A stretch of DNA of 64,000 bases from Octopus bimaculoides (taxonomy: Eukaryota): contig NC_068984.1 in NCBI RefSeq assembly GCF_001194135.2, positions 146,450,097 through 146,514,096 on the forward strand, written 5' to 3'. Positions 4,456 to 25,900 of this stretch are shown piece by piece; the first letter of the stretch is position 1, and each line of letters begins with the position of its first letter. The notes below the pieces were generated by a model, which did no database searches, was not told the DNA's origin, and saw only the letters and a list, made by a program, of their open reading frames with translations. The position numbers and the translations under genes were made by a program.

Positions 4456-4495
<40 letters not shown>

Positions 4496-4850
4496 CACAC
4501 ATACATACATACACACGCATACACATACATACAATAGGCTTCTGCACAGTTTCTGTCTACTCACAAGGCACCAGTTGGCCCATGGTTATAGTACAAGTCA
4601 CTTGGCCAAGGTGCTGTGTAATGGGACTGAACCTGAAACTACATAGTTGCAAAGCAAGTTTCTTAACCACACAGCCATCTCTGCGCAGAAAGATTAGTAC
4701 CAAAAGTTAAATTGTTCTAAATATGGCATAAGTTTAGGGTTTCTTACTGATCCAAGGAATTTTGAACACTTCTAACAATGTTTTTTTTTTCTTTTATCCA
4801 TTTTAAAGCCTGGATTAGTTTCTTACAACAAGAATATCACAATCTCTCAC

Positions 4851-4902
4851 CTCTTCAAATCTTTCAGCTGAAGTTTTAGCTTCATGTTCCATTCTTTCTT
4901 TT
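4851..4902 (-). CDS. DRC1: DRC1 coding exon 3
   Basis: TTGCAG| acceptor and GAG|GTGAGA donor; KERMEHEAKTSAERFEE vs DRC1 IEKLENEVKTSQDKFDE; phase 2-0. Confidence 0.88.
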
Positions 4903-5324
4903 CTGCAACAAGAATTAAAGAAAAAATAATAATTAAATGACAATTAAGACTAATAACAATGTTTAATGAATGTTTCAAGTCAAGTTAAATTATTCCTATA
5001 GCATCTTTGTTGTTGGGGCACAGGAAATTTTTTATCAATTTTTTTTTCTACCTCTTTCAGTCTTGAGCTTTCTCTTCAAGCTGGCCAGATCTGATCTCTC
5101 ACACCTATCCTACAATGTCATTCTAAAAATAAAGAATCACATCATAGAAATCTTGAAACTAAGAGATAATGCATGATTAATTTAAATTAACGAGACTAAA
5201 TAAGCATTAAATCTGAGTAACCATTCTCATCATTTAACCTCCATTTGTCTATGTTTGTCTGGGTTGGAGAGTATTTTTGGTGCAGATTTTTTATAGCCAG
5301 ATGCCTTCTTGTCACCAACCTTAC

Positions 5325-5528
5325 CTTAATCGTGAAGATTCCTCATACTGTATTCTTCGTTGACTCTCCCGAGAATCTCCTGCCGTGTGGATGTTAGTCA
5401 CCAACTGTGAGCCATCACATTCCAATTTCTTTAATCGTTGACGACTCATTTCAATCTGCTGTACAGCTTTACTCATTTCCTCTTTGACATCTGTTGGAGG
5501 GGGTTCAACCTCATCTCCTTTTTTTGTA
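5325..5528 (-). CDS. DRC1: DRC1 coding exon 2
   Basis: TTACCAG| acceptor and AG|GTAAGG donor; 204 nt, phase 2-2; SRQRLKKLECDGSQLVTNIHTAGDSRESQRR resembles DRC1 [31 protein letters not shown]. Confidence 0.92.
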
Positions 5529-6322
5529 CTGGTAACGAAAAATAAAAAAAACAGAGGGAAATTAAATATTGTAATGCATACCCTTCTCCCCCCACATACA
5601 TATATGTACACAAATATTAACCCTTTTATTTTTCATTGCATATTTGCCCCTCGCACATGTCAATCTTTACAAAATCTTTCATAATCTTTTTCTCATTTTT
5701 CATTGAAAGTTGCCATATATATTTTCATTTAATTTAGTTCAAGCATAAAGTGGCAAAATCTGGCAGAACCATTCCCACTCCAGGCAGTATGCTTCGTGAC
5801 ATTTCGCCCCATCTTTTTGTTCTGAGGTCAACTTTACCTTTCAGGGGGTGGGGGAGATAAAATAATTACCAGTTGAGCATGGGGGGTGGGGTCGATGTAA
5901 TCGACTTGTCCCTTCCCCAAAATTACTGTCCTTGTGCCCTAATTTGAAACCAGTTTAGTCCTAGTATATATGCCCCTGGAGTGAGGTACAATATACATAT
6001 GAAAAGGGGTGTTTTCCAGTAAATACTGGTTGTGTAATCCAGTTCACTGTCATTGAAAGGCACGGAATCTTCTGATATGTCTGCAATAAACTGAAGACTT
6101 TTATGAGGCTTGTTTAAGTTGTCATAATACTGGGTTTCTTCATAAATTCTAACTCTGTCATCGAGTGCTTGATATCATTCTAAATTTATTTACAGAGCGA
6201 ATGAGTGTTATTAAACGAATAAAGGATATAAAGGAAAATTAGGCGTAACATAGGAGAAAAATTAAACAAATTGGCCATCAAATGTGTAAATATTATTTAG
6301 TGAACAGCAAAAAAACATTCGA

Positions 6323-6366
<44 letters not shown>

Positions 6367-6388
6367 CTAGCAGTAAGACCATACATCG

Positions 6389-6466
<78 letters not shown>

Positions 6467-6472
<6 letters not shown>

Positions 6473-6680
6473 GCTGCATAGCCTCGTGGTTAGAGTGTTT
6501 CACTCCCAATTGCGAGATTGAGGGTTCGATTCCAGGACCAGGTGGTGCATTGTGTTCTTGAGAAAAACACTTCATTTCACGTTGCTCAAGTCCACTGGAA
6601 ATGGGTAACCCTACGACGGTTAGCCAAGACGAGGCAAAAAGCATTGTGATCGGCGATGTATAACAACATCCGATGGCCGA
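6467..6680 (+). mobile_element. tRNA-headed SINE (second family)
   Basis: GCCTCGTGGTTAGAG...GGGTTCGATTCC head and AAAACACTTCATTT body; copies at 3170-3380, 26395-26530 and 44000-44185 (-). Confidence 0.7.
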
Positions 6681-6846
6681 TTACATGATATACGTCTGTG
6701 TGTGTGTGAGTGCATTTTGTGTGTTCCGTTTAAAACGCAGCCTTTAATAATGTTCAATAACTTCACATAAATATTCGCGCACTAAGTCGATAGAAAGAGC
6801 TACGTTGCCGTAGTGTCTGTGATCACACACGCATTTCTGTTCATAC

Positions 6847-6995
6847 CGTTCTATTGTTCGTTCAATTCTTAATCTTCTGGCAAGTATCCTTTCTTCAGGG
6901 TCATCTGAATTGACATCGGGTTCGTACACAGGAAGTATTTCGCTATTATGCTTTTCCATCCCATACAGGGTGGATCCACCTGCTGTGGAATCCAT
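6847..6995 (-). CDS. DRC1: DRC1/CCDC164 dynein regulatory complex subunit 1, coding exon 1
   Basis: ATG at 6995; MDSTAGG...PDVNSDDPEERILARRLRIERTIER resembles the DRC1 N-terminus (SVHSDNSQERIQARRLRI); donor CG|GTATGA, phase 2, fits the next exon. Confidence 0.9.
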
Positions 6996-7019
6996 TTTGC
7001 CTCGGTTTATGCTTTCTCA

Positions 7020-7033
7020 GTTGGCATGGCAAC
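7020..7033. promoter_or_regulatory. RFX X-box upstream of DRC1
   Basis: GTTGGCATGGCAAC, one mismatch to the palindromic GTTGCCATGGCAAC, 25-38 bp upstream of the DRC1 ATG; ciliary genes are canonical RFX targets. Confidence 0.75.
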
Positions 7034-7216
7034 AGCTGAAGTTCGAAAATGACAAAACAATTAGGTCAAAATATATCAAACCAAATTATTTTTTAGAAAT
7101 AGCTACTAATTAATTAAAATAATTATAAAATACTTACCACACGTTGATGAACAAAAATAACTTTTTAAATACGAAAGCTAGTTAGAAATATATATTACCC
7201 ACAATTCACATCACAT

Positions 7217-7224
7217 TCCTTTCC
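7217..7224 (+). promoter_or_regulatory. TCT / 5'-TOP initiator of RPL11
   Basis: TCCTTTCC fits YYC(+1)TTTYY and lies 13-20 nt before the RPL11 ATG, as is typical of ribosomal protein genes. Confidence 0.7.
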
Positions 7225-7236
7225 GGTTTAAACAAA

Positions 7237-7242
7237 ATGACG
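7237..7242 (+). CDS. RPL11: RPL11 (uL5) coding exon 1 (ATG ACG)
   Basis: AAAATGACG|GTGAGT after a TCT motif; a 2-codon, phase-0 first exon as in vertebrate RPL11. Confidence 0.8.
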
Positions 7243-9550
7243 GTGAGTTGCTTTTAACATTTTTCTGTGTCAAATCTTTTTAATCCTTCCATTAAAACGT
7301 ATTCCTTCTCGATTTTATTTATTCTAAAATAAAATTACAGAAATATGTTTTACTTTCATGTAGATTTTAAAACATTATTTTAACTCTTTCTTTATAAATA
7401 AACAATTTTTCTGGCTCGTCTCTCCTCATGACTTGCGAAATACGTGTTTATCACGTTCTCCCAGGTTTTTCCTCTTTAAACCTTTTATAATTTAAAGGAA
7501 TTGGATTTTCTTTTTCTTTACATCAATGATATTTAATATGGGGCGATTTATTTTAGGTTATGAAATTACTTTACTCAACGCACTCCCAACAACTTTTCCT
7601 AAATTACAACATTCAAAGGAAATTTAATGATTTTCTTGAGGTCGTCGTCATAGTCATGACCACCACCACAGATTTTTCCTTTTTCTTCAATTTCACTGAA
7701 ATGTACAACAGTTTAATTATAATAATGCTTAATATAATCATAATTACACAATTAAGATTTGCTTCAAGCCTCCTCTCTTGTGACATAATTTGAGAAATCG
7801 CGGTAAAAGAACAATTCGTGGAATTAACCAAAATGATTGGAATCAATAATTTTTCTAAATTGTTTTAATTAAATCCCAGCAAAATAATTTGGCGGATCGT
7901 TAATAAGTTAGTCTTAGTTTTTTTATTCCTCAAACATTTCCATTTTTCATTTCTCCAACACGTGTTGTTCATAATTTTTATTTTATTTTATTTCTCGATT
8001 TTGTTTCCACCGCGTGTGGAATTCTGTATTTCCCATCCTTTTGTTAATTGGTATCAGGACTGTCTACCAATATTAATTATTTAGATTTCATTTACCCTAC
8101 CAAAAATGTTTGGTAGGGTGGTAAATTAGAGAAATGTGCTCCACCCCGACCAGCTTTGTTTCCTCATAACTTTCTGAAAAAGCAATATTTTTAAATGAAA
8201 TTTCTTAGAAAAAGTATACATTACGATTATATGAGAATATGTTTTGAAAAATGTTAATTCGGAGTTGTTGGAAGTGTGGCTGGGTCCCACTTGTGTAGTT
8301 ATGCCAATAGATTTATGGTCGAACCAGTTGAAGCCAAGGTGTTAAACATTTAAAATAATTTTATTAAAATCAGTTTAAAGTCCTCTGCTGTTTGCAATTT
8401 CAAGTGCACCTTTCAAGATTAAAAATATATAAATGCTTGACGGCATTTCTTCCGACTACACCTCAACATTGCTGACCCCTTTTCCAAAGTTTGAAGACTT
8501 ATCTTAACAAGTAATTAGTTAATATCTCTACGTCATTAGATTTACATTTCAAACGAATATGAGGTTTTTCATGCTGGCTCGGGTTGGACGGTTTGACTGG
8601 GCACTGGCAAGACAGTAAGCTGCGCCAAGTTCCAATCTGGTCTAGTAAGGTTTCTACAGCTGGATGCCCTTCCTAACGCCAACCACTCCGAGAGTGTAGT
8701 GGGTGCGTGCCACCGGCACAAGAACCAGTCAGGTGGCACTGGCATCGTTTTTTACATGCCACCAGCACAGGGGCCAGTCGGCGGGGCTGGCATCGACCGA
8801 AACGAACATTGAAATGTCTGTGTTGTCGATATTTTCTGTTTTTTATTTTATTGGTATTTGTTTTGTATTTTAAATATTTATGGTTTAGTGTTAAATGTCC
8901 ATTCNNNNNNNNNNNNNNNNNNNNNNNNNNNNNNNNNNNNNNNNNNNNNNNNNNNNNNNNNNNNNNNNNNNNNNNNNNNNNNNNNNNNNNNNNNNNNNNN
9001 NNNNNNNNNNNNNNNNNNNNNGTTCACTCAAATTTATAAATAGATTTAATCGGATTATTGTAAATTTTAAAATTTCTTTTTCGCGTGACCTCTTCATTGT
9101 GCATTTCAAAGGAGACGGCAAGACAAGTGTTGTTAATTTTATACCAGACCAGTTTTGTAGAGCAAGACCTAAATGATAAAAGTTATTCCAACGAACCATT
9201 TTTTATCATTATCTTCTTTTTAATCGAAATCGTAGTATTGAATTTATTATTTGAACAGATCTTTATTTTGGACTAAGTCACACGCCAGAATTTTCAGTTA
9301 AAATCGAGTTTAAAATAGTGCAACATTTACAGAATTATTTCGTGTTTGATTTTTATTTTGATGAAAATTCAAGTAGTCGATCTTGCACTTAGAAGCTTCC
9401 TACTCACTTTGTGGAACAAATACGTATCCGAAATTATAGCCGATATACGCCTGCCCCCACCCTTCAGTGTCGCCAATATAAAATGTTGCTAAAGATGGAA
9501 ACTATGAGTGATGTAAATGGTCCTTTCTTTTCTATAATTCACCCAATTAG

Positions 9551-9707
9551 GTCGACAAGGATGACAAACGAGCTAACAATCAAATGCGACAGCTCCGCAT
9601 CCAGAAATTATGCTTGAATATTTGTGTTGGAGAATCTGGTGATAGGCTCACTCGTGCTGCCAAGGTATTGGAGCAGCTCACAGGCCAGCAACCTGTATTT
9701 TCAAAAG
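9551..9707 (+). CDS. RPL11: RPL11 exon 2
   Basis: [52 protein letters not shown]; TAG| acceptor and G|GTAAGT donor. Confidence 0.97.
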
Positions 9708-10427
9708 GTAAGTAAAATTGTATCAACGTGACACTTGAAAAACGTTGAGGGATGATGTCACTAGTGGTGTTGGCTCTCACCATCATTGCTGCTTGCATGT
9801 GTTGGATGAAACAGGTTTTCTCTGGCTGGTTGCCAACCTTCAAAGTGAGGTAATCTTTCCCCATGACCAGACATGTCTTTGTAGAATATTGGAAGCGAAT
9901 GACATCCATTTACAAAAAGCACATGATATCAAGATAAGGCAGCACAAACATTCATAAATATATATATCATCATCTACTGTCCGTTCATGCTGGCAAACAG
10001 GAGCTGCACCAGACTCCAGTCTAATTGAGCATGGTTTCTACAGTTGGCTGCCCTTTCTAATGTCAATTGCTCCGAGAGTGTAATGGGTGTCTGCCACAAC
10101 TACGATTTCACTTGTCTTGATGGGTCTTCTACTCAAGCACTGCATATTGCCAAAAATCTTGGCCACCTGTCATTGGCTCAGGGCTATAGTTGACACTTAC
10201 CCAAAAGTGTCACAGTGAGACTGAACCTGCAGCCATAGGGTTGGCAGGCAAGCCTCTTAACCATGTAGCCACAACAGTGTCTATTTAGTCATGGTCTAAC
10301 TAGATAAATGAAATTATTCGATAACAGGTCCCCCCTCCCTTGTATTTTTTCCTCTCGACATGACTATCTTTTTTTTTTTTTTTTGTATTTGTATGCTTGT
10401 GCTAAAATGGCTACAATTTTTCTTTGA

Positions 10428-10565
<138 letters not shown>

Positions 10566-12106
10566 TAGCAGCACCATTTCAGGGTTTTGAGGAAGGTTAT
10601 AATTGCACAAGGGGCAGTAAATGGTCAGTCGTAGTTGCATGTCCTTATTTTCAATTGACTTGTTAATTAGTTTATGACTAAATGCAATTAGGTAAAGTTT
10701 TGCTCATATTAAAAGAAGCATCCATCTAAACTCTTCCAGGTAACTATTGGATCTAAACGGTTATATCTAAATGTGAGGTGAAAGTGCTAATGCTTTTACT
10801 TAAGTATTTTACCTCATCTCACAGGTGTTTTTCTGTGTTGGATTGACTGAGACAAACCTTCAGTTCTTTGAATTACAGTTATTTCTACAATGTTTGAGAC
10901 TCTTTGTAAATTGGTTGCATTAACATCAAAGTATAAATGGCACATGTTATTAGTAAGCCAGAATGGGATTCATGAGTTATTTCATTTCTTTCATAATTCA
11001 TATAGAAATTTAACTAGGATGCACATCGAAAAAGGGGCTAGTCTAGCTGGATGGGATATTATCGCAAAACCTGTGGAGAAGGTCATATATAATAGACAAT
11101 TCAGTGAAAGGGGTCACTGGGTTATGAAAGGTTGTCAACGATTTAGCATTCAGACAACTCTATCAAATGTATTTATTAACATTTTGAATTTTTATGTTAG
11201 GTGATCCTTTGAGAATGTCCTATGGGCGACAGTTTGCTTAGTCTGGTTGAGGGCAACAAGGCTATCATTCACTTGTTATTGGTATTATGTTCTGTTTAAT
11301 CACGACACAGAATCCTTTGTAGTTTTTATACCTTGAAGTTGGGAGATGGGGTGGGGTTTGTGCAAATATTTTATTATAGAAGATGCTAAAGTCGTTGGCA
11401 AAGTGGATCTTGGTTGGTCAACATGTCAGTTATATTTTGTTGGTTTCAAAGTTTTGTACTTGTAACCTTTGACCTTGGCATTAAACTCTGACTGAACAGA
11501 GCTACAATAAAAATCATTCTGACCATTAAATTGTCTTCATTCATAGAGTACGGAGAAGTACATTGTCTAATGTCCTTACTTTTCAGCATGTAATTGGATG
11601 GACATTTGGTTGGTATTTGATTGACCACGTAGATACTCTCTTGATTTTTTTTGGCATAAGTGATAGATTGTTTGTCCATGTGGGGACCTCTCTTGCGGGC
11701 TTGGTGGCATACAAGGGCTTTCATGTAGTGAACAGATTTATTGTTCAATTGTGTTGTAAGAATGGAATTCACCTTAGGTGCATGGGAACTGAGTACCCTC
11801 ACTTCTTTGTAGGTGCACGAGACACAAGAACCAAGTTAAGTCGTTTTTGATCAGGGTCCAGGTGGGGTGTTATTTTAGAGAATTCTTTTCATATTTTATA
11901 TGATGTATACTCCACACCATTTTTATGGGCCAGTAGAAAGTGGTTGCAAGAGTGGCTGTACATGTTAGATGCAGATTCGTATAGAAAACTTGAATCCGTG
12001 CAAGGGGCGTGAATATTGTCGTGGGCGAGGAAGCTTTCCATTTTGTCTGCTGCTGATTGTCTTGTATTGCAGGATTAATGTTGTTATTGGTTCTCTTCTT
12101 TTCCAG

Positions 12107-12254
12107 GTTAGAGAATATGAATTGAGAAAGTCCAATTTCTCTGAGACTGGCAATTTTGGGTTTGGTATTCAAGAACACATTGATTTAGGAATTAAGTATG
12201 ATCCCAACATTGGTATCTATGGCATGGATTTCTACATTGTTCTTGGCCGACCTG
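12107..12254 (+). CDS. RPL11: RPL11 exon 4
   Basis: [49 protein letters not shown]. Confidence 0.97.
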
Positions 12255-12579
12255 GTAAGTAGTTCTTTATAAAGTCATTGGAAAACCAATCCCAACATTG
12301 TTAAATTTTTCATCATTCTTCTTTGGATAAGTCACGCCATTTTATACTTGATCCTAACTTAAAAATTGGGGTACGACTTCTACAAGTTGTACTTTGTATT
12401 TTCAAAGGGCCAACCTTGTCACATTCGGTGTCATGCTGAATCTCCCTGAGAACTACGTTTAAGGTACACTTTGTCTGTGGAGTTCTCAGCCGCTTCTATG
12501 TTAATTTCACGAGCAAGCTGTTCTGTTGCTCGGATCAACTGGAGCACTTTGTCATCACAGAGTGCCAGTTTTTTTATTC

Positions 12580-12770
12580 TCGGTACGTAAAAGCACCCAC
12601 TACACTCTCTGAGTGGTTGGCGTTAGGAAGGGCATCCAGCTGTAGAAACTCTGCCAAATCAGACTGGAGCCTGGTGTTGCCATCCGGTTTCACCAGTCCT
12701 CAGTCAAATCGTCCAACCCATGCTAGCATGGAAAGCGGACGTTAAACGATGATGATGATGATGATGATGA
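12580..12770 (+). mobile_element. SINE-like repeat with (GAT)n tail in RPL11 intron 4
   Basis: Reverse complement of the 19478 and 8565 copies; ends GGACGTTAAAC(GAT)n. Confidence 0.8.
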
Positions 12771-14068
12771 TTCCTAACCAAATAATAGCTTGTCATCTGA
12801 TTCAGCAGACTTGTAGAATTATGTACATCGACACGACTAAATACAAGTGGAAAATTTTCTCTTTTGGCTTTGTATGCAGTCACTTAGCAAATTTCCTTTC
12901 CGCTCCACCTCTTTTAAAACATTTGTTTCTTATCCGTTAGCATCTCTTTTGTATTGTCATCACCCTAGCAGTTGTGTATGCTGCCACAACTAAGTCCAGT
13001 CAAGTTTGATCAAACTGAAAAGAAACCAAATAGATCAGAAAACATTATATAGCCTTAGTGTATGATATAGAAGTGGTCATTTTCTAACCACATTGTACTC
13101 TGGGCCCTGCTGACGTGTGCCATTGTCTTCCCATATAAAAATGATAGCCACAACAGTTCTGAGGACTCTCCATTTTGTGGGTTTACCTGGCATGTTGTAG
13201 GAAGTGTAATCTGAATTAAGGAGGGTATATTTTGGCCGATATGGTGAGAAAAGAGCTGAATTAGTATAGCACACACTAAAGTGGTTGGTGTTGGGAAGAG
13301 TATCCAGCTGGAGAAACCATGCCAAAGCTGACCATGAAGCACAATGGCCCTGTGGCTCACCAGACCCTGTTAAACCATCCAACAGGGAGAATGGATGTTA
13401 AATGACGATGGCTTTTTCTCATGTATTTCCAGTTACTTAGTCACAGTTTCAAAAAGTGTTCTCTGCTCATTTATACAGGTTCATTTCTACCTTAGTCCTG
13501 TGTAATTCTGGGCTGCTTACTTAATAATGGTTTTAGTCAAAAATGCTGAATTTCCTTTCTCTGATTTTTGAGATCAGAAATTCTTGTGCATATTTTTTTG
13601 TCTGTGACGATTTCTGAAGTTATGTTGTGGAACCAAAGCAATTACTGGAAGACTGCTTGGATCCGGTCTCTAAAGAAATACTTAAAATGAATTTTTACTC
13701 CATTGTCTTTCTGATATACAAAGTTGTTAACACTTTCGTTTTCCTTATTGTAGTTGCTGTTGTCAGTCATATATATTGTATATTAACACCAAGGTTATAC
13801 ATGTTACATTTGTTTCCACTGCTTTAAAAGAAAAAATCCTTCCAATTCAAAGGCGTGACTGGGGCTTCCTATTGTTAAACCAGCATATTTCCTGGTGTAT
13901 TATTCATCCACTGTTATTGTTTTTTTCTTTCAACCAAATGTTCTGTCTGATAGTGCTCCAAGCTTTTTTCCTCTCTTGTCAGGCTTTCTTTTGTTATATC
14001 TTGTGTGTGTGTGTTGTGAAAGTATACATAACTCCCTAATATAATATTGATATTTCCAGTAAATCAAA

Positions 14069-14200
14069 GCAATGTAACACTGAGTATATATAAATGTTAA
14101 ACCATTTATACTCTGACTTGCCATTGCTAAATCAACTCCATATTCAGCAACACTGCTCCAACTTCATGTTGGCTTCAGTTACTTCAATTATGGAACATTT
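14069..14200 (+). ncRNA. Box H/ACA snoRNA, copy A (predicted guide for 18S psi609 and psi1174, human numbering)
   Basis: Hairpin 1 GCAATG/CATTGC with upper stem GAGTA/TACTC; H box AAATCA 14129-14134; hairpin 2 CCATA/TATGG, ACTG/CAGT, CCAAC/GTTGG; ACA 14195-14197 plus 3 nt; 132 nt; pockets 14 and 15 nt from the boxes. Confidence 0.85.
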
Positions 14201-15732
14201 ACCCTGACGACTTTGTCACCATTAACCAACCCTGTCTATTTCTATTATAATAGTGCTATCATAATTGGATAGGATTATTCTAAAATAGTCGTGAATTTAG
14301 ATTGATTTTCATAAAATAACTCGATCAACATATGTGATCTTTTGGAACATAATTTAACAAAAGGTTTTCAATCAAACTTATGTCATAATTTTTGCTTCAA
14401 AGTGAATCTAATTACAGGTAAATATAGGTAGATTCAGCAAAATTGTGCAAATTACTAGGTTATCTATCAGTTGAACTTAATGCACATAAGACAGGTTTGC
14501 CATAAGGGCAACAAGAAAATACTGGAATTTGTCTTAGAAGAAAACTAGGAATTGAAGAATATGCCAACAGCTAAATGAAATAAACTCACATGCATACATA
14601 AATATACAGAAACAAGGATTTCACAATATAAATTAATCAAAATTTCTCACAACTTTTACTGGCAAATAAAAAAAAGTAAATTTGAAAAAAAAAAAAACCA
14701 AATAAAAGTTAAAAACCTCATTAAGGGATAATAAAATCCAATGAATAAACTGGTTAATTACTGATTACAAGAAGTATTGAATAATTACAATTAATATTCA
14801 ACAGCAAGGTGACTGGATAAACCAGGGTTTATTATATATTTTTAAGAAAATAGAGATAATTAAATTAATAATTATCTCTGACAGCTGTTTTGATTAAAGA
14901 CTTTTAGAAATTGATATAATTAAAAACATTTTAAGGCTGAACCTCATTGGAGTGGCTAACGATATATCATTAGATTCTCATGTCCCAGTGTGTTGAGTGT
15001 ACGGCTCCAAACTGCTATTTTATATATATATATATATTTACTGTGATGATGGTATAGCTTCAAAGGGAAAGTGAAGAAAATGATGAAACCATTTTGTTTC
15101 CTTGGAAAGACTGCGGCTAGGTCTAATGTCTTTCTAAAAATAACTTTTTAAATTCTTACAGGATTCAGTACAAATTCACATTTTATTTTTTTTATCACTA
15201 TCGGAATTATTGTCCGAATAGCTTCACTTTTGGCAATAGAAATGTCTGATTCATAGTCGTGCACCTGATTTTTATGCTTGCTGTATATTTACTTTGTGGT
15301 TCTTGTGGTTTTCAACATCTTTCTATACCCATTGATCCTTTTGTTTCATATTTCACATCCTCTTAGCCATTCTGTGTTTAAAATATTATAAATTTATTAT
15401 CAAATATTCTTAGGAATTGTATGAAAATATTTATTAAAGTATTGTGTGTACTGGAGAAGAACTGTAACCAGTTTATTTCTCTTTCACAACAAAATCTTAT
15501 GTGGATCCCAATTGAAAATCACTGAAAATTGAGCTTAAACAAAAAAAAAAAAGTGTATTTATTGAACTGTGTACACTTGTATACGTAGAAGGTAACTATT
15601 AGTTCTTCAAAATGGACGAGTGAAGACAATGTAGACTATTAAATCCAAATATAAAATTGTGATAAATTATTTTTGAATTTTGAAATATTTGTTTTGTGAG
15701 AGCAGCAATCCAGTGTTTGCTGCTGTTAAAAT

Positions 15733-15861
15733 GCAATGTTAGACGGAGTATTGGACTGTCTGTGACTTCTACTTTGACACAACATTGCTATAATAAATTC
15801 CTTAATAGCAACCTGCCCCAACTCAATGTTGGCTTCAGTTACTCAATTTAAAGGGACATTG
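15733..15861 (+). ncRNA. Box H/ACA snoRNA, copy C (diverged paralogue; same 3' pocket, different 5' pocket)
   Basis: GCAATGTT/AACATTGC stem; H box ATAATA 15790-15795; 3' pocket GCAAC + TACTC; ACA 15856-15858. Confidence 0.78.
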
Positions 15862-16743
15862 CCCTATAAAAGGATTTTCTTTTATATCTTGTTTGTTACT
15901 TTGAGATTGTCTGGCATCTCATCACCACACCATGTGTCTTCTTTCCAGCTACCCCCCCCCCTCTCCTATACAATGTGGGATGGCCAGGTATCTCCTCTAG
16001 AGCAAAGCCCCTGGGTTTGTCCCTCTATCATGCTTTGAAGACCACCATTTAGTCAAGGGGACTTTTTTTGTTTCTTTGTCTTGCAAATTATTTGGCAACC
16101 TCACTGGTTCCAGTAGCACAGAGAAGGAAAAAAAAATGAAGCACTCAGTAAAGTGTTTGGCATTAGAAAGAGCATCCAGCCTTAGAAAGCATGCCAAAGG
16201 TGGCATTGGAAGTCGACACTGCCCCGTAGCTTGTTGGCTTCAGTTGAGTATGGAAAACAAGTGTTAAGTGATGATGATTTCAATTGTATGAATTAGTAGT
16301 AAATACAAGTGAATGCTGTAAAGCCTTGAAAAATTAAAACAGAGATTGAACTGGGTTGGATTGTGAAAGCTAGTCCTTCCTTGATAGAAGTGAAATAGAA
16401 TCTAAAGGAAAGACATGAACAGGAAGACTGATAGAAAGGAAGGATTGGGTATAGGGGTTAATGTGGGGTTGGGGATTTGGATATAACGAGTGATGAGAGG
16501 AAGAGAGACAGAAGGGATGGAGGTAGCATGAGCTGTGAGGAGCAGGGGCCATTATAGTAGAAGAGGTGGGAGGAGACAGTGTCGTCTATTGAAGCATGCT
16601 TATGGGTGGTCATATTCTTGGGCTCTTTTCTGTATCTGGTCTAGGATTTCTCTGTCCAGTAGTGTTCACATAAATTGATAAAACTCAAATACAAATATTG
16701 TTAGTATTTCAAAAACCTCATTTGATATTTCCAGTAGATCAAA

Positions 16744-16875
16744 GCAATGTAACACTGAGTATATATAAATGTTAAACCGTTTATACTCTGACTTGCCATT
16801 GCTAAATCAACTCCATATTCAGCAACACTGCTCCAACTTCATGTTGGCTTCAGTTACTTCAATTATGGGACAATT
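16744..16875 (+). ncRNA. Box H/ACA snoRNA, copy B (near-identical to copy A)
   Basis: Differs from copy A at two positions before the ACA box (one turns an A-U into a G-U pair); ACA 16870-16872. Confidence 0.85.
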
Positions 16876-17773
16876 TTCTGAAAAATTTTGACCAATTGGT
16901 TGCTGTTGTTTGTCAGGTGTTTTGGTCAGCCAGGCTAATAACATTTGGCTGCTGTCTGACCTCGTCAATCTACTTCTATACTTAATTGTTAGCTGACATC
17001 GAAATTTACTTTCCTTCTTTCTATGCTTTTAATGTTTTTTATTGCAACTTTTTCTATACTTCTTCTGTAGAGGAAGTTAGATCTAGTCTTTAAGAGAAAA
17101 AAATCTAGTTGAAAGCGGTTTTAATTTGAGATTTCATGATTGGTCTGCTGTATTCCACCTACACAGTAATACCTCGTCTATCATGGGCGTTAGGTTTCAA
17201 AGCCTCCCGTGATAGGTGAAAATCCACGAAGTAGAAGCAGTACCGTATATTTTGTTTTATTATCTTTATCATTTGTATATATTTATTTTATTATAAATGC
17301 AAAACAACACTGCAGAGGAATGGATGGAAGCTTAAATTGTAAACTGCAATGGGTGAACGGTGATATGGCGAGGGGATTACTGTAAATCCAACAATATTCT
17401 CTCTGCAGAACTTGACAGGAATAAGCAGTGTGGTTAAGGAATCTAGGCTTGCTAAATGCCATGGTTCTGTATTAGCAGCACAGCAGCAACCGTAGCGCAT
17501 TAAACTCATCCAGTTACTATTGGTTACACTACTCTAAATTTTATACTGGTTGATATTTTCACTGAGGATATTGCAAGATTTTGCAGTTGCTGAGGGTATG
17601 GATAATGTGCTAGACAAGTCACCACAAAGTCACTTGTTGATATAATTTGGAGGAAATAGGTCCCCATAATTAAATGGTAGTTCTTTTTTTCCCTATCACC
17701 CAGTGTTTACCATGCTGCATACTTTACAAATTATCTTTCTACTAAACTAATTCTGATTGTCTGAATATTTCAG

Positions 17774-17868
17774 GTTACAATGTGAGTCTCCGCCGACGAA
17801 AGAAGAACAAGATAGGAGTCAAACATAAAGTCACAAAAGAGGAAGCTTTGAAGTGGTTCCAACAAAAG
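17774..17868 (+). CDS. RPL11: RPL11 exon 5
   Basis: GYNVSLRRRKKNKIGVKHKVTKEEALKWFQQK; TTCAG| acceptor and AAG|GTGAAT donor. Confidence 0.96.
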
Positions 17869-18421
17869 GTGAATTATTGGTTTCTGTTGGTTTCAGTAAG
17901 AAACTGAGGAATAATCTTTTTGTTTTTGAATTGTAGGAAAGACCTTCTAATTTAATACAAGTCTCCAACTGTGGGGAAAAAAACCTTTTAAGCAAATGTT
18001 CCGATTGCTGAAACCTGCTTGGGAAACAAAACTGTTGAAAGTTTTTATTAAAGATAAAAAGATTGGATGAATTTTTACTGTTTCCGAATTTAAATAAGAT
18101 TGGCAAAAATTAATTGCCACTGGGAAAATGAGAGGGAGAAAGATTTTAAACAATTTCTAATATTTCAGAAAGTGTGTGAGCATGGGTAATCAGCATTTAA
18201 TAAGATATTTCATTTATATAGTTTTGGGTAATTTTGTAGTTGGTCTGCTTGATTGCTAATGAATTCTAACCATAGTAAAAGATTATAATGTTTGGTAGTT
18301 AATTAAATATGCTTAACATCATAAACTCATTGTTGCTAATTAATATTCCCTCTTAAATGTTCTATTCAGAGTATTTTAAATATGGCTTTAAATTCAATAT
18401 AATTTTCTTTCTTTCTTCCAG

Positions 18422-18451
18422 TTTGATGGTATCCTCCTCCCTGGCAAATAA
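18422..18451 (+). CDS. RPL11: RPL11 exon 6 (last; 180 aa total)
   Basis: FDGILLPGK-TAA after a long pyrimidine tract; the six exons sum to 543 nt. Confidence 0.95.
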   Translation, partial: FDGILLPGK

Positions 18452-18459
18452 TTACATGA

Positions 18460-18474
18460 AATAAACAAAATAAA
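18460..18474 (+). terminator. RPL11 polyadenylation signals
   Basis: AATAAA at 18460-18465 and 18469-18474, followed by a T-rich downstream tract. Confidence 0.75.
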
Positions 18475-18589
18475 TATTCAAATTATTTGTTTTAGTTATT
18501 TTTTTCTTGTTTTTATTTTTAATTTTCTGTTTTGAACAAGGTCTGAGAAAGTGATTCTATGGTCCACCTCCTGCCAGCCTGGAACTTTG

Positions 18590-19480
18590 ACCCTTCATTT
18601 GTTCAAGCCGGCCGTAATCGACCAAAATGAATTCGCCTTTATTTGTTCCAAGCCGGTCGTGTCCGAAAGCTCTACGAAATCGCTAAAAAAAAAATAAACA
18701 AATCACGTTATTGTATTCGCATGGCTTGGGACATGATGCAGTGTGGTCTCTTAGGGAACCATTTCACCATCAGCACTGACACCTCTATTTTGACTTTTTT
18801 CTTCAGTGGTTTTGGCAGAAAATCTTGCCTGTGTAAGTACTTGAATGTGCAGTACTGTTATGGGAAACCGTAAAGGTTTACCCCATGAAATGAAAACAAA
18901 ATTAAAAAATAGAGGGGACATTTTACAAATGCAAAAAGAAAATATATAGATTACTGCTTTTAAAGACAGATTTTATTTGTGTTTTCTAATGAACAACCTG
19001 GTGTTGGTGCTGAGGGGAAACCCCTCGTGAATATTTCTTATAACAAATATATGGGTGGGGTTGATAAATCCGACCAATATCGGGCATATTACCCAGTTGG
19101 TCAACCTGGGAAGAAATGGTGGAGGTACATTTTTGTGGTTTTTAGTTAGTTTAACTATAGTTAATTCATATATTGTATATGTAAAAAGCCACCAAAGGAC
19201 TACGACCATTTGAAATTCCGGGTTGACATCGCATCTTAGTTACGTGAGGGATTTTCTTCTAGAAAGCACAGAACTGGGAGAAAAGCAAAATTAACTGAGG
19301 TGGATGTCAACAGAAAATATTGACTTCCATAAAGTGGAAAAAATAAATGGATGAAAAAGAAGTTTGCAGAATTCGCTGCAAAAGGGTATCAGATTGAGAC
19401 TTCATATATGTGTTCCTTTTGCAAAGGGTGCTTTGGGCAGTCTCATGATAGAAATATGTCACTATATTATTTTGTAAGTA
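18590..19480 (+). pseudogene. Degraded piggyBac (PGBD-type) transposase
   Basis: Frameshifted motifs GLGHDAVWSLREPF / HLYFDFFFS, TVMGNRKGLP, YNKYMGGVDKSDQYRAYYPVGQPGKKWWRYIF, then a Cys-rich tail remnant. Confidence 0.8.
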
Positions 19481-19810
19481 TCATCATCATCGTTTAACGT
19501 CCGCTTTCCATGCTAGCATGGGTTGGACGATTTGACTGAGGACTGGTGAAACCGGATGGCAACACCAGCCTCCAGTCTGATTTGGCAGAGTTTCTACAGC
19601 TGGATGCCCTTCCTAACGCCAACCACTCAGAGAGTGTAGTGGGTGCTTTTACGTGTCACCCGCACGAAGGCCAGCCAGGCGGTACTGGCAATGGCCACGC
19701 TCGAAATGGTGTATTTTATGTGACACCCGCACAGGAGCCAGTCCAGGGGCACTGGCAACGATCTCGCTCGAAAATCCTACGGAGGCCAGTCAGGCGGTAC
19801 TGGCAACGGC
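19478..19810 (-). mobile_element. SINE-like repeat with (GAT)n tail
   Basis: CATCATCATCGTTTAACGTCCGCTTTCCATGCTAGCATGGGTTGGACG...; copies at 4108-4441 and 8565-8800, and in the opposite orientation at 12580-12770. Confidence 0.8.
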
Positions 19811-20963
19811 ATTAATTTTCAGTATGTTACACACCTGTATTCGCCTTTGTCTCACCTGTTAATGAGATTTTTTTAATTAGATGCATTCTGTTACGTAAAT
19901 GAATTCGTTAAATTGTATAAAAGTGCATAGCCAATGGTATATTGACTAGTAAAAGTTTTGTACTTTATTTTCAATGATGACATTTGAATGAAATATCGAA
20001 AAAGAGTAAAATCTACTGATTACACCTGTATTTAAATTAATGTACTTCATCTTGAAAACTGTAAAATTGTGGGCGGTTAACATCTGGGATAATTTTAGCA
20101 GCAAACCAAACAGCTAAGATGTATTAAGAATATGAATTTGAGTGTTTATTCATAATGTTATTGTTTTTACACATGTTAATTAAGTTTACCTGCCCATAAA
20201 AGTCAAATTTAGTCAGGAAGATCAGCTAAAATTACGTAATTATAAACCACTGGCATATAAGCACCCATTTACAGTTTCAAATCTGTATGTAGAAAATTAA
20301 CAAAGGATGTGGATATATATATATATATATTTATAATTCATAGCTCTTTAAAGCTATTATAACTGCGTTCCACCCATGCCACTACTGGTGATATCAATTT
20401 TTGAATTTATCTACAGATGATAGGAACAGTAGTGACATCTAACTTCAAATCTCAGTGTTTGAATATTTCATTTATATATTTTTCGCACCATGTGCTCTGA
20501 TTTTGGCGCAAAACAAAACCAGTTACACGGTCAGAGACTAACGTGAACAGTCACGGATTTAAACTGGTGGTCCACACTGACGAGGCTCAAGGTTAAATAC
20601 ACAAAAGCCGAAACCTGGTTTGTGGATATCCCTAATTGCATAATATTTTTATTTGTGCTGTTAAATGTTTTAATCCTTTCTGTTTTCCTCGCATATTGTT
20701 TTTCTCTGTTATATTGGTGCGCTACGGTGGATTATTTAAGACTTAGCTCTTATTTCTAGCAGGTAGATGCTCATTAAGCATCATTACGCTTCGTGCAAAT
20801 TTATAATTCATAGCTCTTTAAAGCTATTATAACTGCGTTCCACCCATGCCACTACTGGTGATATCATCAATTTTTGAATTTATCCACAGATGATATGAAC
20901 AGTAGTGACATCTAACTTTAAATCTCAGTGCTTGAATATTTCATTTATATATATATATATATA

Positions 20964-22930: not shown

Positions 22931-25900
22931 TGTATAAAAATTTGTTTTCAGATGATAAAAATTTTCAGTTGTCAGTACTTTACATCCGAATACGAAATCG
23001 TGCTTACAGTGATTTATAAGACTTGGATGGGAAACATGTTTATATTAGAAATTCAAATATATGAAAAAATATAATAAAGATAATAAGATGTAAAATGTTA
23101 ATGAAGTAAGATATAAGAACATGAAAACCGTGTGTAGATACATTCGAGGGAGAATAAATGGAGTTTAGTAATACGAGATATGAAGATAAAAGTCAGTTAA
23201 AAACCTACGGCCGTTTCAGGAAATATTAAGAGGTTGTAGGAACAGTCCATATTCAGCTCCATCGAATAATATTTCCTTCTTCAGGATTCGTTTTATCCAT
23301 TCTATATGATGAATCTCTATTGGTGGGTGGACGTCGAATGATTATATATATATATATATACTTTTGTTATTTACACCACCTGTCCTCGTCTGTTGTTATT
23401 ATTTGTATATTCTCCCATATATATATATATATATAGACACGGTGATAGATTGATAGANNNNNNNNNNNNNNNNNNNATATATATAAACAATTATGGGTAC
23501 AGGACATCACCAACTGTAAACAACATGAAGTGCGAAAACAAACGAGTTGTGTGATGTATTAAAGACACATTCTCGTTACGGTCGTTACATAGTGTCCTCG
23601 TCTCACTACTATACAAGACTCGGATCTGCTACATCCTTTTCATGAATTGTGACAGCGACCGACCTTTAAGCATTTGATGCTTCTGGAACACCACTGGAGC
23701 ACTGTACCTACCTTATCTGCGTTGGAGTAAACTTGGGCTGTACTCTTTCCTTTAAGGTACACGTCAAAAGAACCAAATTGAAAGTTTGTTCCCGAAAGCA
23801 CATCCCACGGAAAATGGGCAACTCCAGATGGGAAACCACAGCACATACATTAAGATCCATTGCTTTGGTCTTGTGCCGTTTCTCTGAGGAATATAGACGT
23901 CCCGTCTGAGAGAAGTCACTCCGTTTCAAGAAGAAGCTCGACCCAACATTGAACAACAACACCAGATGCCACCTAATCATTGTTTTCAGGAAACCTACCA
24001 ACACAACCTGTTCCTCCTGACCCTCCTGATATTCGATAGGAAGTGGTTAACGAAGCCGAAATGATAAGAGGTGCATCGTTGCCATGGACGACAAACCCCC
24101 ATCCAAACGACCGAAATTATGAAGCTTTCTTAACCATTTCTAGCCTAATTTTGTTCTAAGTTTTTTTATGGTCAAATTCAAGCATGTGTATTTTACAAAT
24201 TCGTAACACAGAAATCCTTATGAGTGTCCTCTGGGTTTGCTAGAAATCACAGTGAAGTCTTTCTCGGATCACACACTGTATGGTTACGGGGGAAAAAAAC
24301 AAGCAAACATATTATATAATGTAATCAAATATACATTGTTATATGTTCATGTCTATGTGTATGCGTAGGTATACGTATATATGAATACATCCCCATTATT
24401 AGTAATATTTTGTCAAGCGCATCTAGTGGACATGAACTGTGAATAAAGCGAATACGCACAGTGTCTCACTCCGTTATACATCATACAGTTGTAAGCATAC
24501 CACTTAAATAAACACGTAGAATCATAATAACGCCTTCAATGGGTTGTTTTATTGTCCAACACAAACCAAAGAATGCATAACACACATTATATCTAAAAGA
24601 GACTGGATGCTATTATTACTGGAGCGCTTTTGATAAAAACCCTGTTTGGTCTCGGAATAAAGAATAATTTTTTTTCATTTCGTATCAAAACCAGAGAAGT
24701 TACTTCCCTTTGACCAGTCATTTTTCTCGATTCATTTCTTCTCAAAGCTTTCTCTTGTCAATATTTGATGATTTGAATCGATCGATTTGCCTCGTTGTCA
24801 TCGCATTCCCTCCTCAATATTCTATTAGAGATAAAGCAAACATTGAACTTCGTATCAAATTGCTGAAAACTTTATTTTCTATAAGACGAAAGTAATACAT
24901 CAATAGTAGAACGTCTGTAAGCGTTACAGAAGATATGGCTTCGAGTCCCCCAGGAAGCCTTTGGTGTTTTCCGTCTAAAGGGATTTCTAATCTAGTATTC
25001 ACATGCTATTATTTATTGCTTTTTCTGCTTCGAGTTCCACTGCTAAAAACAAATAAGACTGTGAACAGTCGTAGCAAAGATTAAAAAAGTATTAAAATTA
25101 TTAATGCCATTACAGCGTAGAAGACTCGTTTTATCCATTGAAAACCACACAGAAACTGTAAATCATTTATTATTTGGTATCAAAATATTTGTCGCAGTGT
25201 CTGTGACCTGGTCATTGACGCAGTTCCACTAAAAATGGTTAAGTGAGGTCAACAGTCTTTGTGCGTCTTTGAATGGCCAAAGTGAGTCTTTCAAGCTGTA
25301 ATTGTTTTAGTCTCAACACACAAGACTCATATCAAATGTCACATAAGTACGATTCCAAGTATTATAAATGATGGTAAAAAATTTGAAATATTGGTTTCTA
25401 TTTTGGCTGGGAATAAAGGCTTGAAGAGAAATAAAAAGATTGTGATCTTCGATTTGCTTTTTTAAAGGGATCCAAACCAATGATTGAAACCGTGTCTCTT
25501 GTTTTACACTGCTGGCTAAAGTTGAGATATTCACTTAAAGCTACAGATTAAGGGACGGGTGGTGTGTGGGTGGTGGTCCTGTTATATAGTTACTTGAGCA
25601 GACGCAGTAAATTACTGGTATATATTTTCGATTAGCCCAGAATAACGAAAGGTACAACCACACTAGTTGGAATTGAACTCAATAGTTTGTAGCTAAATAT
25701 TACAAACCATTTAAGTCATCATTCTGCTGTTTCTATCTCCTTCACACTTCTGTATGATTAGATGGAGTCTGATAATTTACAGTTTAAGAATTTATGGAGA
25801 ATCAAATAGTTTATTCCATTTCCCATTTTGTACTTTCTCTTTGTATTTTATTGAACTGTTGCGCCTAATTAAACTGTAATCAACATAACTTTGAATATTT

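What the first reader, a model, noticed from the sequence alone, without database searches (positions are those of the whole stretch)
14069..16875. Three paralogous H/ACA snoRNAs in one RPL11 intron, combining two rRNA guides that are separate genes in human
Seen: three 129-132-nt hairpin-H-hairpin-ACA units in the 5.5-kb intron 4. In copies A and B the 5' pocket (CAC + GACUUGCC, 14 nt from box H) fits GGCAAGUC-U-G-GUG. In all three copies the 3' pocket (GCAAC + UACUU/UACUC, 15-16 nt from ACA) fits GAGUA-U-G-GUUGC. Recalled knowledge: these are conserved 18S sequences around human psi609 (guided by SNORA24) and psi1174 (guided by SNORA40). Inference: a dual-guide snoRNA family formed by hairpin shuffling and amplified within one intron, departing from the one-snoRNA-per-intron pattern of vertebrates. 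The 5' arm of the psi609 duplex has only 3 contiguous pairs, and the host 18S sequence is not in this window.
Basis: partly seen in the sequence, partly recalled or inferred. Interest (0 to 1): 0.85.

Follow-up and report, generated by a model that had tools for sequence, protein, structure and literature searches.

The report
SNORA40-like H/ACA snoRNAs in RPL11 intron
Three copies of an ordinary pseudouridylation guide RNA sit in one intron of the ribosomal protein L11 gene; they belong to an old family, related to human SNORA40, that I found in the same gene in snails, a clam, a brachiopod, worms and a spider.

Summary
Three 129-132 nt hairpin-H-hairpin-ACA units lie in sense orientation in the 5.5 kb RPL11 intron (A 14069-14200, C 15733-15861, B 16744-16875).

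They are very likely real box H/ACA snoRNA genes. A covariance model built only from the RPL11 intron units of a periwinkle finds all three (E 1.6e-7, 5e-7, 1.4e-3) and nothing else in the window. Related units sit in RPL11 introns of Haliotis, Littorina, Mya, Lingula, Owenia, Lineus and a spider. Across taxa the guide arms are kept while the stems change by compensatory substitutions.

The annelid, abalone and brachiopod units hit Rfam SNORA40 over its full length, below threshold. The family is therefore best read as SNORA40-like.
- The 3' pocket carries the conserved SNORA40 job, the 18S site equal to human psi1174.
- The 5' pocket of copies A and B targets the site equal to human psi609, which SNORA24 serves in human.

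This dual-guide arrangement also occurs in two gastropods and a brachiopod, so it is not a cephalopod invention by hairpin shuffling. Several copies per intron are usual in molluscs and the spider.

Verdict: a new member of a known kind. Expression and the host 18S sequence remain untested.

The parts
12255..17773 (+). Host intron of RPL11/uL5, between the exon ending at G12254 (first base of the Gly138 codon) and the exon starting at 17774. Phase 1, GTAAGT...CAG.
   Evidence: tblastn and translations; splice sites read. The same intron position, after aa 138, holds the arrays in Mya and Littorina.
12107..12254 (+). RPL11 exon upstream of the host intron (aa 89-138).
17774..17868 (+). RPL11 exon downstream of the host intron (aa 138-169).
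14069..14200 (+). Unit A, a dual-guide H/ACA snoRNA candidate. 5' hairpin 14069-14127, H box 14129-14134, 3' hairpin 14137-14194, ACA 14195-14197.
   Evidence: Fold z -4.3. Littorina-only model 36.6 bits, E 1.6e-7 and 6.8e-8.
14078..14080 (+). Unit A, 5' pocket, 5' arm CAC. Pairs with 18S GUG, 3' of the target U-G.
14115..14122 (+). Unit A, 5' pocket, 3' arm GACUUGCC. Pairs with 18S GGCAAGUC. It lies 14 nt before the H box.
14129..14134 (+). Unit A H box AAAUCA (ANANNA).
14147..14151 (+). Unit A, 3' pocket, 5' arm GCAAC. Pairs with 18S GUUGC.
14180..14185 (+). Unit A, 3' pocket, 3' arm UACUUC. Pairs with 18S GAAGUA (or GGAGUA with one G-U). It lies 15 nt before ACA.
14195..14197 (+). Unit A ACA box.
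15733..15861 (+). Unit C, a diverged paralogue (78% identical to A and B over about 95 nt). The 3' pocket is kept (GCAAC 15808-15812, UACUC 15840-15844, ACA 15856-15858). H box AUAAUA 15790-15795. The 5' pocket (AGAC / GACAC) has no consistent rRNA match.
   Evidence: (21.9 bits, E 1.4e-3)
16744..16875 (+). Unit B, a near-identical copy of A. CAC 16753-16755, GACUUGCC 16790-16797, H box 16804-16809, GCAAC 16822-16826, UACUUC 16855-16860, ACA 16870-16872.
   Evidence: (34.7 bits, E 5e-7)
14047..14068 (+). 22 nt upstream of unit A that is duplicated together with it (16722-16743 before unit B). Contains the inverted repeat TTGAT...ATCAA. Role unknown.

Best explanation
The three units are paralogous box H/ACA snoRNA genes of an old, SNORA40-like family that lives in RPL11 introns.

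How it most likely works (inferred from established H/ACA biology):
- The units are transcribed as part of the RPL11 pre-mRNA.
- Each is bound co-transcriptionally by the H/ACA core proteins (dyskerin, NHP2, NOP10, GAR1). The rest of the intron is degraded around these protected particles.
- With three units up to 3.6 kb from the splice sites, release of the inner ends needs an endonuclease cut or degradation of the spacers. Trimming from the intron ends alone would not do it.

What each pocket does (shown by complementarity and conservation, not by experiment):
[quoted passage not shown] This is the conserved SNORA40 function.
- The 5' pocket of A and B places the U of GGCAAGUC-U-G-GUG, equal to human psi609, which SNORA24 guides in human.
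- Copy C has lost the 5' guide and has a weaker 3' hairpin. It is either a one-pocket guide or a decaying copy.

History (inferred): the copies arose by local duplication, as in other molluscs. A and B have either diverged little or are kept alike by gene conversion.
For: (1) Anatomy. Hairpin-hinge-hairpin-tail, ANANNA and ACA boxes, open 9+9 nt pockets, and arm-to-box distances of 14, 15 and 16 nt.

(2) Homology from an independent species. A covariance model built only from 7 Littorina units finds A, B and C at 36.6, 34.7 and 21.9 bits. With filters off it finds nothing else in the 64 kb window.

(3) Conserved location. Related units lie in the sense strand of RPL11 introns in seven other species:
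- Haliotis: 8 units
- Littorina: 8 units, 7 of them in the same intron as here
- Mya: 9-10 tandem units in the same intron
- Lingula: 2 units
- Owenia: 3 units
- Lineus: 1 unit
- the spider Trichonephila: about 20 tandem units

(4) Covariation. On the 31-sequence structural alignment, 90.8% of cells are paired and 23 of 27 pairs have changes on both sides. The covariation score is 0.554, against 0.208 in shuffles (0 of 500 reach it) and 0.07-0.09 when partners are slid. An independent RNAalifold run on a MAFFT alignment gave 11 of 19 pairs with double changes.

(5) The guide arms stay constant while the stems change. GCAAC and UAC are invariant across all taxa. GGCAC and GACUU are kept in Haliotis, Littorina and Lingula.

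(6) Link to SNORA40. Units of Owenia (39.2, 36.2, 23.5 bits), Haliotis (30.1, 29.7) and Lingula (29.1, 28.0) all match Rfam RF00561 SNORA40 over positions 1-128 of 128, and match no other H/ACA family. The SNORA40 consensus 3' hairpin carries the same uuugCAAC...AUAC arms.

(7) Target specificity. On six metazoan-type environmental rDNA contigs, the predicted sites are the best matches: 3+8 bp and 5+6 bp, with no G-U pairs. The invertebrate-type context GGGAAGUAUGGUUGCAAAG makes UACUUC a perfect 6-bp arm.

(8) Pairing is sufficient. At least 8 bp spread over both sides is enough for guided pseudouridylation in yeast, and the split may be uneven (PMC6049503).

(9) The A/B differences that fall in stems keep pairing, as A-U to G-U changes.
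Against: - No expression, RNA 3'-end, protein-binding or pseudouridine data exist here.
The rDNA used is from unidentified environmental eukaryotes.
- The window units themselves do not hit SNORA40, or any other H/ACA family, even at E<10. The link to SNORA40 is therefore transitive.
- The 5' arm of the psi609 duplex is only 3 bp in A and B. The eighth pair of the other arm competes with the lower stem.
- A loose single-hairpin guide scan is not specific on its own: 20 hits against 18.9 expected.
- The covariation alignment was fitted to the model's structure, which favours that structure.
- Copy C folds less well: whole unit z = -1.85, 3' hairpin z = -0.11.
- No other cephalopod could be examined.
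Confidence: 0.85

Rival explanations
1. A cephalopod-specific chimera made by joining a SNORA24-type hairpin to a SNORA40-type hairpin, then amplified in one intron as a departure from normal snoRNA organisation.
For: In human the two sites are served by two different snoRNAs in different host genes (PMC6466398). The octopus-like 5' hairpin has a lower stem (GCAAUG/CAUUGC) and arm lengths (3+8) that differ from the other taxa.
Against: The same pair of guides in the same order occurs in Littorina, Haliotis and Lingula RPL11 introns. The 5' hairpin aligns with the SNORA40 5' hairpin, with shared lower stem UGCAC/GUGCA, in Lingula, Haliotis, Owenia and the spider. No unit hits SNORA24 at E<10. 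Multi-copy introns occur in Haliotis, Littorina, Mya and the spider.
Confidence: 0.07
2. The units are relics: duplicated snoRNA pseudogenes that no longer yield stable, active snoRNPs. The functional guides for these sites would lie elsewhere in the genome.
For: Copy C has lost one guide and has a weak 3' hairpin. The 5' arm of A and B is only 3 bp. No expression data are available.
Against: A and B keep both boxes, both pockets, correct box distances and stable stems. Their few differences preserve pairing. They score as well against the Littorina model as the Haliotis units do. The guide arms are intact after divergence that has removed all detectable similarity in the flanks.
Confidence: 0.07
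3. Chance hairpins, or fragments of an interspersed repeat that happen to look like H/ACA snoRNAs.
For: The intron holds SINE-like repeats. One of them (16140-16278) shares a 30-nt stretch with the apical stem of the 3' hairpin, including the exact 12-mer GTTGGCTTCAGT.
Against: That SINE copy lacks the guide arms, the lower stem and the boxes, and it aligns with the other SINE copies along its length. The units occur only in this intron within the window. They are found at the orthologous gene in eight animals, with covarying stems.
Confidence: 0.01

Closest known systems
SNORA40 (ACA40; Rfam RF00561), vertebrate box H/ACA snoRNA
   Same: Same class and size (128 nt consensus). The 3' hairpin carries the same guide arms (uuugCAAC ... 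AUAC) for the highly conserved 18S site, human psi1174. The 5' lower stem UGCAC/GUGCA is shared with most invertebrate units. Units from Owenia, Haliotis and Lingula match the model end to end. PMC6984369 describes the 18S site as the conserved function of this pocket.
   Different: The window units do not reach any reportable score against RF00561, and their relatives stay below the gathering score of 51 bits. The host gene is RPL11 rather than TAF1D (PMC6466398). Here the 5' pocket has a clear rRNA target, the psi609 site. There are several copies per intron. According to PMC6984369, the human-specific second target (28S-4546) belongs to the same pocket and is not expected here.
SNORA24 (ACA24), the human guide for 18S psi609 and psi863
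   Same: The 5' pocket of A and B is complementary to the same 18S site, GGCAAGUC-U-G-GUG (PMC6466398).
   Different: No sequence or structure match to the SNORA24 model at E<10. The host is different (SNHG8 in human). There is no psi863 guide. It shares a function with SNORA24 but is not a family member.
[quoted passage not shown] 2004, J Mol Biol 341:669; Huang et al. 2005, RNA 11:1303)
   Same: Several H/ACA snoRNA paralogues hosted by one protein-coding gene, often a ribosomal protein gene. This breaks the vertebrate habit of one snoRNA per intron. I know these papers from their titles, as cited in PMC2246290 and PMC5932544, and from my own recollection of their content.
   Different: I could not read the papers, so the details of the Drosophila arrangement were not compared. 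Here the copies are 1.0-1.7 kb apart rather than tightly packed.
Yeast snR31 (guide for 18S psi999/1000, the equivalent of human psi1174)
   Same: Targets the equivalent conserved 18S uridine (my recollection, not tested here).
   Different: It is an independently transcribed yeast gene. No sequence comparison was made.

Membership tests
Box H/ACA snoRNA (class) | Hairpin-hinge-hairpin-tail secondary structure of about 120-140 nt | tested here: met
   MFE folds of A and B are exactly this (z -4.3 and -3.2). C can adopt it. The structure is supported by covariation across taxa.
Box H/ACA snoRNA (class) | H box ANANNA in the hinge, and ACA three nucleotides from the 3' end | tested here: inconclusive
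   AAAUCA (A, B), AUAAUA (C) and ACA are present at the right places. The mature 3' end cannot be read from DNA.
Box H/ACA snoRNA (class) | Bipartite pocket complementary to the target, with the target U 14-16 nt upstream of box H or ACA and at least 8 bp over both arms | tested here: met
   Distances are 14, 15 and 16 nt. Duplexes are 3+8, 5+6 and 5+4 bp on metazoan-type rDNA proxies, and are the best sites on those contigs. The 8-bp rule is from PMC6049503. The host 18S itself is not available.
Box H/ACA snoRNA (class) | Sense orientation in an intron of a housekeeping host gene (the usual arrangement in animals) | tested here: met
   + strand inside RPL11 intron 12255-17773.
Box H/ACA snoRNA (class) | Stable RNA bound by dyskerin, NHP2, NOP10 and GAR1, and pseudouridine present at the predicted site | not testable with these tools
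   Needs RNA sequencing, RIP and pseudouridine mapping.
SNORA40 (Rfam RF00561) | Score at or above the curated gathering threshold (51 bits) | tested here: not met
   The window units give no hit at gathering or at E<10. Relatives score 23.5-39.2 bits.
SNORA40 (Rfam RF00561) | 3' hairpin pocket guiding the conserved 18S uridine (human psi1174) | tested here: met
   GCAAC / UACUY arms sit in the 3' hairpin of all three units. The same arms are in the Rfam consensus.
SNORA40 (Rfam RF00561) | Homology traceable through intermediate sequences | tested here: met
   The window units match the Littorina model (E 1e-7), which also finds the Haliotis and Lingula units and, weakly, the Owenia units. The Haliotis, Lingula and Owenia units match SNORA40 end to end, with best E 6e-4.
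SNORA24 (Rfam RF00399) | Sequence and structure match to the family model | tested here: not met
   No SNORA24 hit at E<10 in the window region or in any related locus.
SNORA24 (Rfam RF00399) | Guide for 18S psi609 | tested here: met
   CAC / GACUUGCC in units A and B. Not in unit C.

The most novel reading that the evidence does not exclude
The link between RPL11 and a SNORA40-like snoRNA is ancestral to protostomes (molluscs, brachiopod, annelid, nemertean, spider). The 18S psi1174 pocket has stayed fixed for over 500 million years. The other pocket has been retargeted in place: to the psi609 site in molluscs and brachiopods, and to other or no targets elsewhere. The gene has repeatedly expanded into tandem intronic arrays of 3 to about 20 copies. 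Such arrays must be processed by an endonucleolytic pathway that has not been characterised for animal intronic snoRNAs.
Probability: 0.5. Interest if true: 0.5.

Novelty: new member of a known kind. Interest (0 to 1): 0.38.

Why it matters
- It gives two concrete, testable predictions of pseudouridines in this animal's 18S rRNA, and names the guides responsible.
- It shows that standard Rfam annotation misses a conserved snoRNA family in molluscs. There is no hit at the curated threshold in any of the eight RPL11 loci where I found the family.
- It offers a clean case for studying how one pocket of an H/ACA guide stays fixed while the other changes target.
- It also shows how snoRNA genes multiply within a single intron of a conserved host gene.

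None of this changes what is known about how H/ACA guides work.

Tried and rejected
- **Rfam on the window.** No hit at gathering threshold on the whole window, and nothing relevant at E<10 on 13500-17500 and E<2 on 7000-20000. Rfam alone would have called this unannotated.
- **Loose single-hairpin guide scan.** A scan of my own (at least 3 bp per arm, at least 8 Watson-Crick pairs) gave 20 hits against 18.9 expected from Markov simulations. Complementarity of one pocket alone is not evidence.
- **MAFFT alignment of 24 units from 7 taxa.** It put the stems out of register and RNAalifold returned no structure. I replaced it with a model-guided alignment.
- **A possible fourth copy at 16205-16260.** Rejected. 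It is part of a SINE-like repeat, lacks arms, boxes and lower stem, and aligns with the other SINE copies.
- **Flanking homology between A and B.** None beyond 154 nt. No poly(A) tail or target-site duplication is visible, so a retroposed origin is not indicated.
- **Orthologous cephalopod loci.** The protein search returned only unnamed transcripts at 96% identity and no cephalopod genome. Conservation within cephalopods could not be tested.
- **No unit found** in Crassostrea, Ptychodera or Stylophora RPL11.
- **A target for the 5' pocket of unit C.** No consistent site on six rDNA contigs.
- **Exon 1 of RPL11.** Not found; an assembly gap lies at 8905-9021.
- **Huang et al. 2005 (PMC1370813).** Not held.
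Full report
**What is there.** The window carries an RPL11/uL5 gene on the + strand. A tblastn search with a human RPL11 sequence that I recalled, plus frame translations, gave these exons:
- 9551-9707
- 10453-10559
- 12107-12254
- 17774-17868
- 18422-18451

The assembled protein is 96% identical to unnamed marine eukaryote transcripts and 85-86% identical to named mollusc proteins.

The intron between 12254 and 17774 is 5519 nt. On its sense strand lie three units: A at 14069-14200, C at 15733-15861 and B at 16744-16875.

**Checking the observation.** A and B fold on their own into hairpin-hinge-hairpin-tail with two open internal loops. Energies are -30.1 and -28.8 kcal/mol, with z-scores of -4.3 and -3.2 against shuffles.

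| Unit | 5' pocket arms | H box | Distance to H | 3' pocket arms | Distance to ACA |
|---|---|---|---|---|---|
| A, B | CAC + GACUUGCC | AAAUCA | 14 nt | GCAAC + UACUUC | 15 nt |
| C | AGAC + GACAC | AUAAUA | - | GCAAC + UACUC | 16 nt |

Unit C folds less cleanly as a whole. Its 3' hairpin can still take the canonical shape at -9.0 kcal/mol.

A and B are 97.4% identical over exactly 154 nt, which is the snoRNA plus 22 nt upstream. No similarity is detectable outside that stretch. C is 78-79% identical to both over about 95 nt. The A/B differences that fall in stems change A-U pairs to G-U pairs.

The composite pattern GCAAC-N18-45-GTTACTY-N8-12-ACA occurs three times, against 0.03 expected.

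**Evidence from other genomes.** Rfam gave nothing for the window, so I fetched RPL11 loci of other animals by exact-protein look-up. Simple guide patterns, and then a covariance model, showed the same kind of unit on the sense strand of RPL11 introns in seven of them:

| Species | Units | Position |
|---|---|---|
| Mya arenaria (clam) | 9-10, tandem, 165-nt period | same intron as here (after aa 138) |
| Littorina saxatilis (periwinkle) | 8 | 7 in that same intron, 1 in intron 2 |
| Haliotis cracherodii (abalone) | 8 | 1 in intron 3, 7 in intron 5 |
| Lingula anatina (brachiopod) | 2 | one each in introns 2 and 3 |
| Owenia fusiformis (annelid) | 3 | one per intron |
| Lineus longissimus (nemertean) | 1 | intron 2 |
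| Trichonephila (spider) | about 20, tandem, plus 2 more | last intron; the 2 extra in an earlier intron |

I found none in the RPL11 genes of Crassostrea, Ptychodera or Stylophora.

A covariance model built from seven Littorina units alone scored the window's units as follows:
- A: 36.6 bits (E 1.6e-7)
- B: 34.7 bits (5e-7)
- C: 21.9 bits (1.4e-3)

It also recovered the Haliotis, Mya and Lingula units. With filters off it found no further copy in the 64 kb window.

On the resulting 31-sequence alignment:
- 90.8% of cells form standard pairs
- 23 of 27 pairs show changes on both sides
- the covariation score is 0.554, against 0.208 for shuffles (0 of 500 reach it) and 0.07-0.09 when partners are slid by 1-3 columns

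That alignment is fitted to the structure, which favours it. An independent RNAalifold run on a plain MAFFT alignment of the octopus-like, Littorina and Mya units already gave 11 of 19 pairs with compensatory changes.

In contrast to the stems, GCAAC and UAC of the 3' pocket are invariant in all 24 aligned units. GGCAC and GACUU of the 5' pocket are kept in Haliotis, Littorina and Lingula. Conserved arms beside freely covarying stems are the signature of a working guide RNA.

**Which family.** At relaxed thresholds, several units matched Rfam RF00561 SNORA40 over model positions 1-128 of 128:
- Owenia: 39.2, 36.2 and 23.5 bits (best E 6e-4)
- Haliotis: 30.1 and 29.7 bits
- Lingula: 29.1 and 28.0 bits

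All lie below the gathering score of 51, and none matched any other H/ACA family. The printed consensus shows the same 3' pocket arms (uuugCAAC ... AUAC) and the same 5' lower stem (uGCaC/GuGCa) as the invertebrate units.

- SNORA24 guides 18S-609 and -863 (host SNHG8).
- SNORA40 guides 18S-1174 and 28S-4546 (host TAF1D).

Deryusheva, Talross and Gall (PMC6984369) add a further point. [quoted passage not shown]

So the conserved SNORA40 function is the one held by the 3' pocket of all three window units. The window units are best described as divergent, RPL11-hosted relatives of SNORA40. This link is transitive: window to Littorina model, to Haliotis, Lingula and Owenia, to SNORA40. The window units themselves fail the Rfam test.

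**The targets.** The host 18S is not in the window. As a proxy I pulled 120 environmental contigs that contain the first target context. Of these, 72 also carry the second target:
- 18 read GGGA-AGUAUGGUUGCAAAG
- 2 read GGGG-AGUAUGGUUGCAAAG
- the rest carry the GGUCGCAAGG variant, which I recognise as fungal or plant type

With the GGGAAGUA form, the A/B arm UACUUC pairs perfectly over 6 bp.

On six long rDNA contigs of that type:
- The predicted uridines are the best targets of the A/B pockets, at 3+8 and 5+6 bp with no G-U pairs. Other sites reach 9 bp, usually with several G-U pairs; one contig has a competing site of 10 Watson-Crick bp (6+4) for the 3' pocket.
- The 3' pocket of C gives 5+4 bp.
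- The 5' pocket of C has no consistent site.

Yeast experiments put the minimum at 8 bp. These may be unevenly split, but both sides are needed (PMC6049503). A 3+8 duplex is therefore acceptable in principle. One caveat is that its eighth pair competes with the lower stem.

**What the comparison says about origin.** The pairing of a psi609-type 5' pocket with a psi1174-type 3' pocket is shared by the window, two gastropods and a brachiopod. In Mya only the 5' arm (CUGGCAC) of that pocket survives. In Owenia, Lineus and the spider the 5' pocket differs, while the lower stem UGCAC/GUGCA is the same. This fits retargeting of a resident pocket by point changes, as PMC6984369 describes for vertebrate snoRNAs. 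It does not fit a cephalopod-specific fusion of two foreign hairpins.

Several copies in one intron are also not special to this genome. [quoted passage not shown] I know that paper only from its title as cited in PMC2246290; the related 2005 paper could not be read.

What is particular to the window:
- wide spacing of the copies (1.0-1.7 kb apart, 0.9-3.6 kb from the splice sites)
- a SINE-like insertion between C and B
- the shift of the psi609 duplex from about 5+5 bp to 3+8 bp

**Mechanism, and how sure.**
- Shown: structure, boxes, distances, complementarity, homology, covariation and a conserved host gene.
- Inferred: co-transcriptional assembly with the H/ACA proteins, release from the intron, and pseudouridylation of the two 18S sites. 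Because inner units cannot be freed by trimming from the intron ends alone, some internal cleavage or spacer decay is implied.

I put 0.85 on 'real H/ACA snoRNA genes guiding the psi1174-equivalent site', about 0.7 on the psi609-equivalent function of A and B, and about even odds that C is still useful.

**Novelty and score.** This is a new member of a known kind: a standard guide RNA of a known family, in a lineage where it has not been annotated. It has a different partner guide and a different host gene from its human relative. Exchange of guide functions between snoRNA families, and intronic snoRNA clusters in invertebrates, are both documented. A specialist would find the deep RPL11 linkage and the recurrent tandem amplification mildly interesting rather than surprising. 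Interest 0.38.

Noticed in passing
window 12585-12770, 13268-13412, 16140-16278; also 19480-19654, 4109-4337, 8566-8706, 10007-10089, 2009-2173, 1657-1712: A SINE-like interspersed repeat of about 170 nt ending in (GAT)n. Copies 12585-12759 (+) and 19654-19480 (-) are 99.4% identical and inverted relative to each other. One lies in the snoRNA-bearing intron and the other just downstream of RPL11.
   Followed up: partly
window 16215-16246: The SINE copy between units C and B contains ACACTGCCCCGTAGCTTGTTGGCTTCAGTT, which closely resembles the apical stem of the snoRNA 3' hairpin and includes the exact 12-mer GTTGGCTTCAGT. It has no arms or boxes. I cannot tell whether this is coincidence or local sequence exchange.
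   Followed up: partly
window 14047-14068 and 16722-16743: The A/B duplication includes 22 nt upstream of the snoRNA that contain an inverted repeat (TTGAT-N11-ATCAA). Unit C is instead preceded by a perfect 8-bp hairpin, AGCAGCAA...TTGCTGCT, at 15703-15727. A role as processing signals was not tested.
   Followed up: no
window about 980-7000, minus strand (e.g. ORF 2065-2505): Coiled-coil exons upstream of RPL11 on the opposite strand, with a weak NYD-SP28 (DRC1-like) Pfam match (E 4.6e-4, below cut-off). A gene with that domain sits head-to-head with RPL11 in Haliotis, Crassostrea, Littorina, Lingula, Lineus, Owenia and Ptychodera, which points to very old synteny.
   Followed up: partly
L004 (Mya arenaria RPL11) 2262-2392, 3680-3813, 5990-7185, 10571-10670: The clam RPL11 gene also carries sub-threshold matches to SNORA19 (two; 47.8 and 44.8 bits), SNORA23 (three, in the same intron as the SNORA40-like array) and SNORD15. 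No counterparts were found in the window.
   Followed up: no
L130 (Trichonephila RPL11) 10777-15456: About 20 tandem SNORA40-like units (period about 228 nt) in the last intron of a spider RPL11. They have the same 3' pocket (UGCAAC ... UACUU) but a different 5' pocket.
   Followed up: partly
L004 7784-9065: In Mya the 5' pocket keeps the psi609-type 5' arm (CUGGCAC) but has an unrelated 3' arm (GUUAUAAGUC). That arm resembles the SNORA40 consensus at the same place (CUuauagac). This may be an intermediate or a different target.
   Followed up: no
window 4228-4237, 4442-4451, 8905-9021, 23458-23476, 32895-32998, 48227-48417, 51189-51365, 56564-57198 and others: Fourteen runs of N (assembly gaps). 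The one at 8905-9021 lies where RPL11 exon 1 and the promoter would be expected.
   Followed up: no
L007 (Lineus) 4447-4541, minus strand: Sub-threshold match to the mir-2002 precursor family (38.4 bits, E 1.8e-4) just downstream of RPL11.
   Followed up: no
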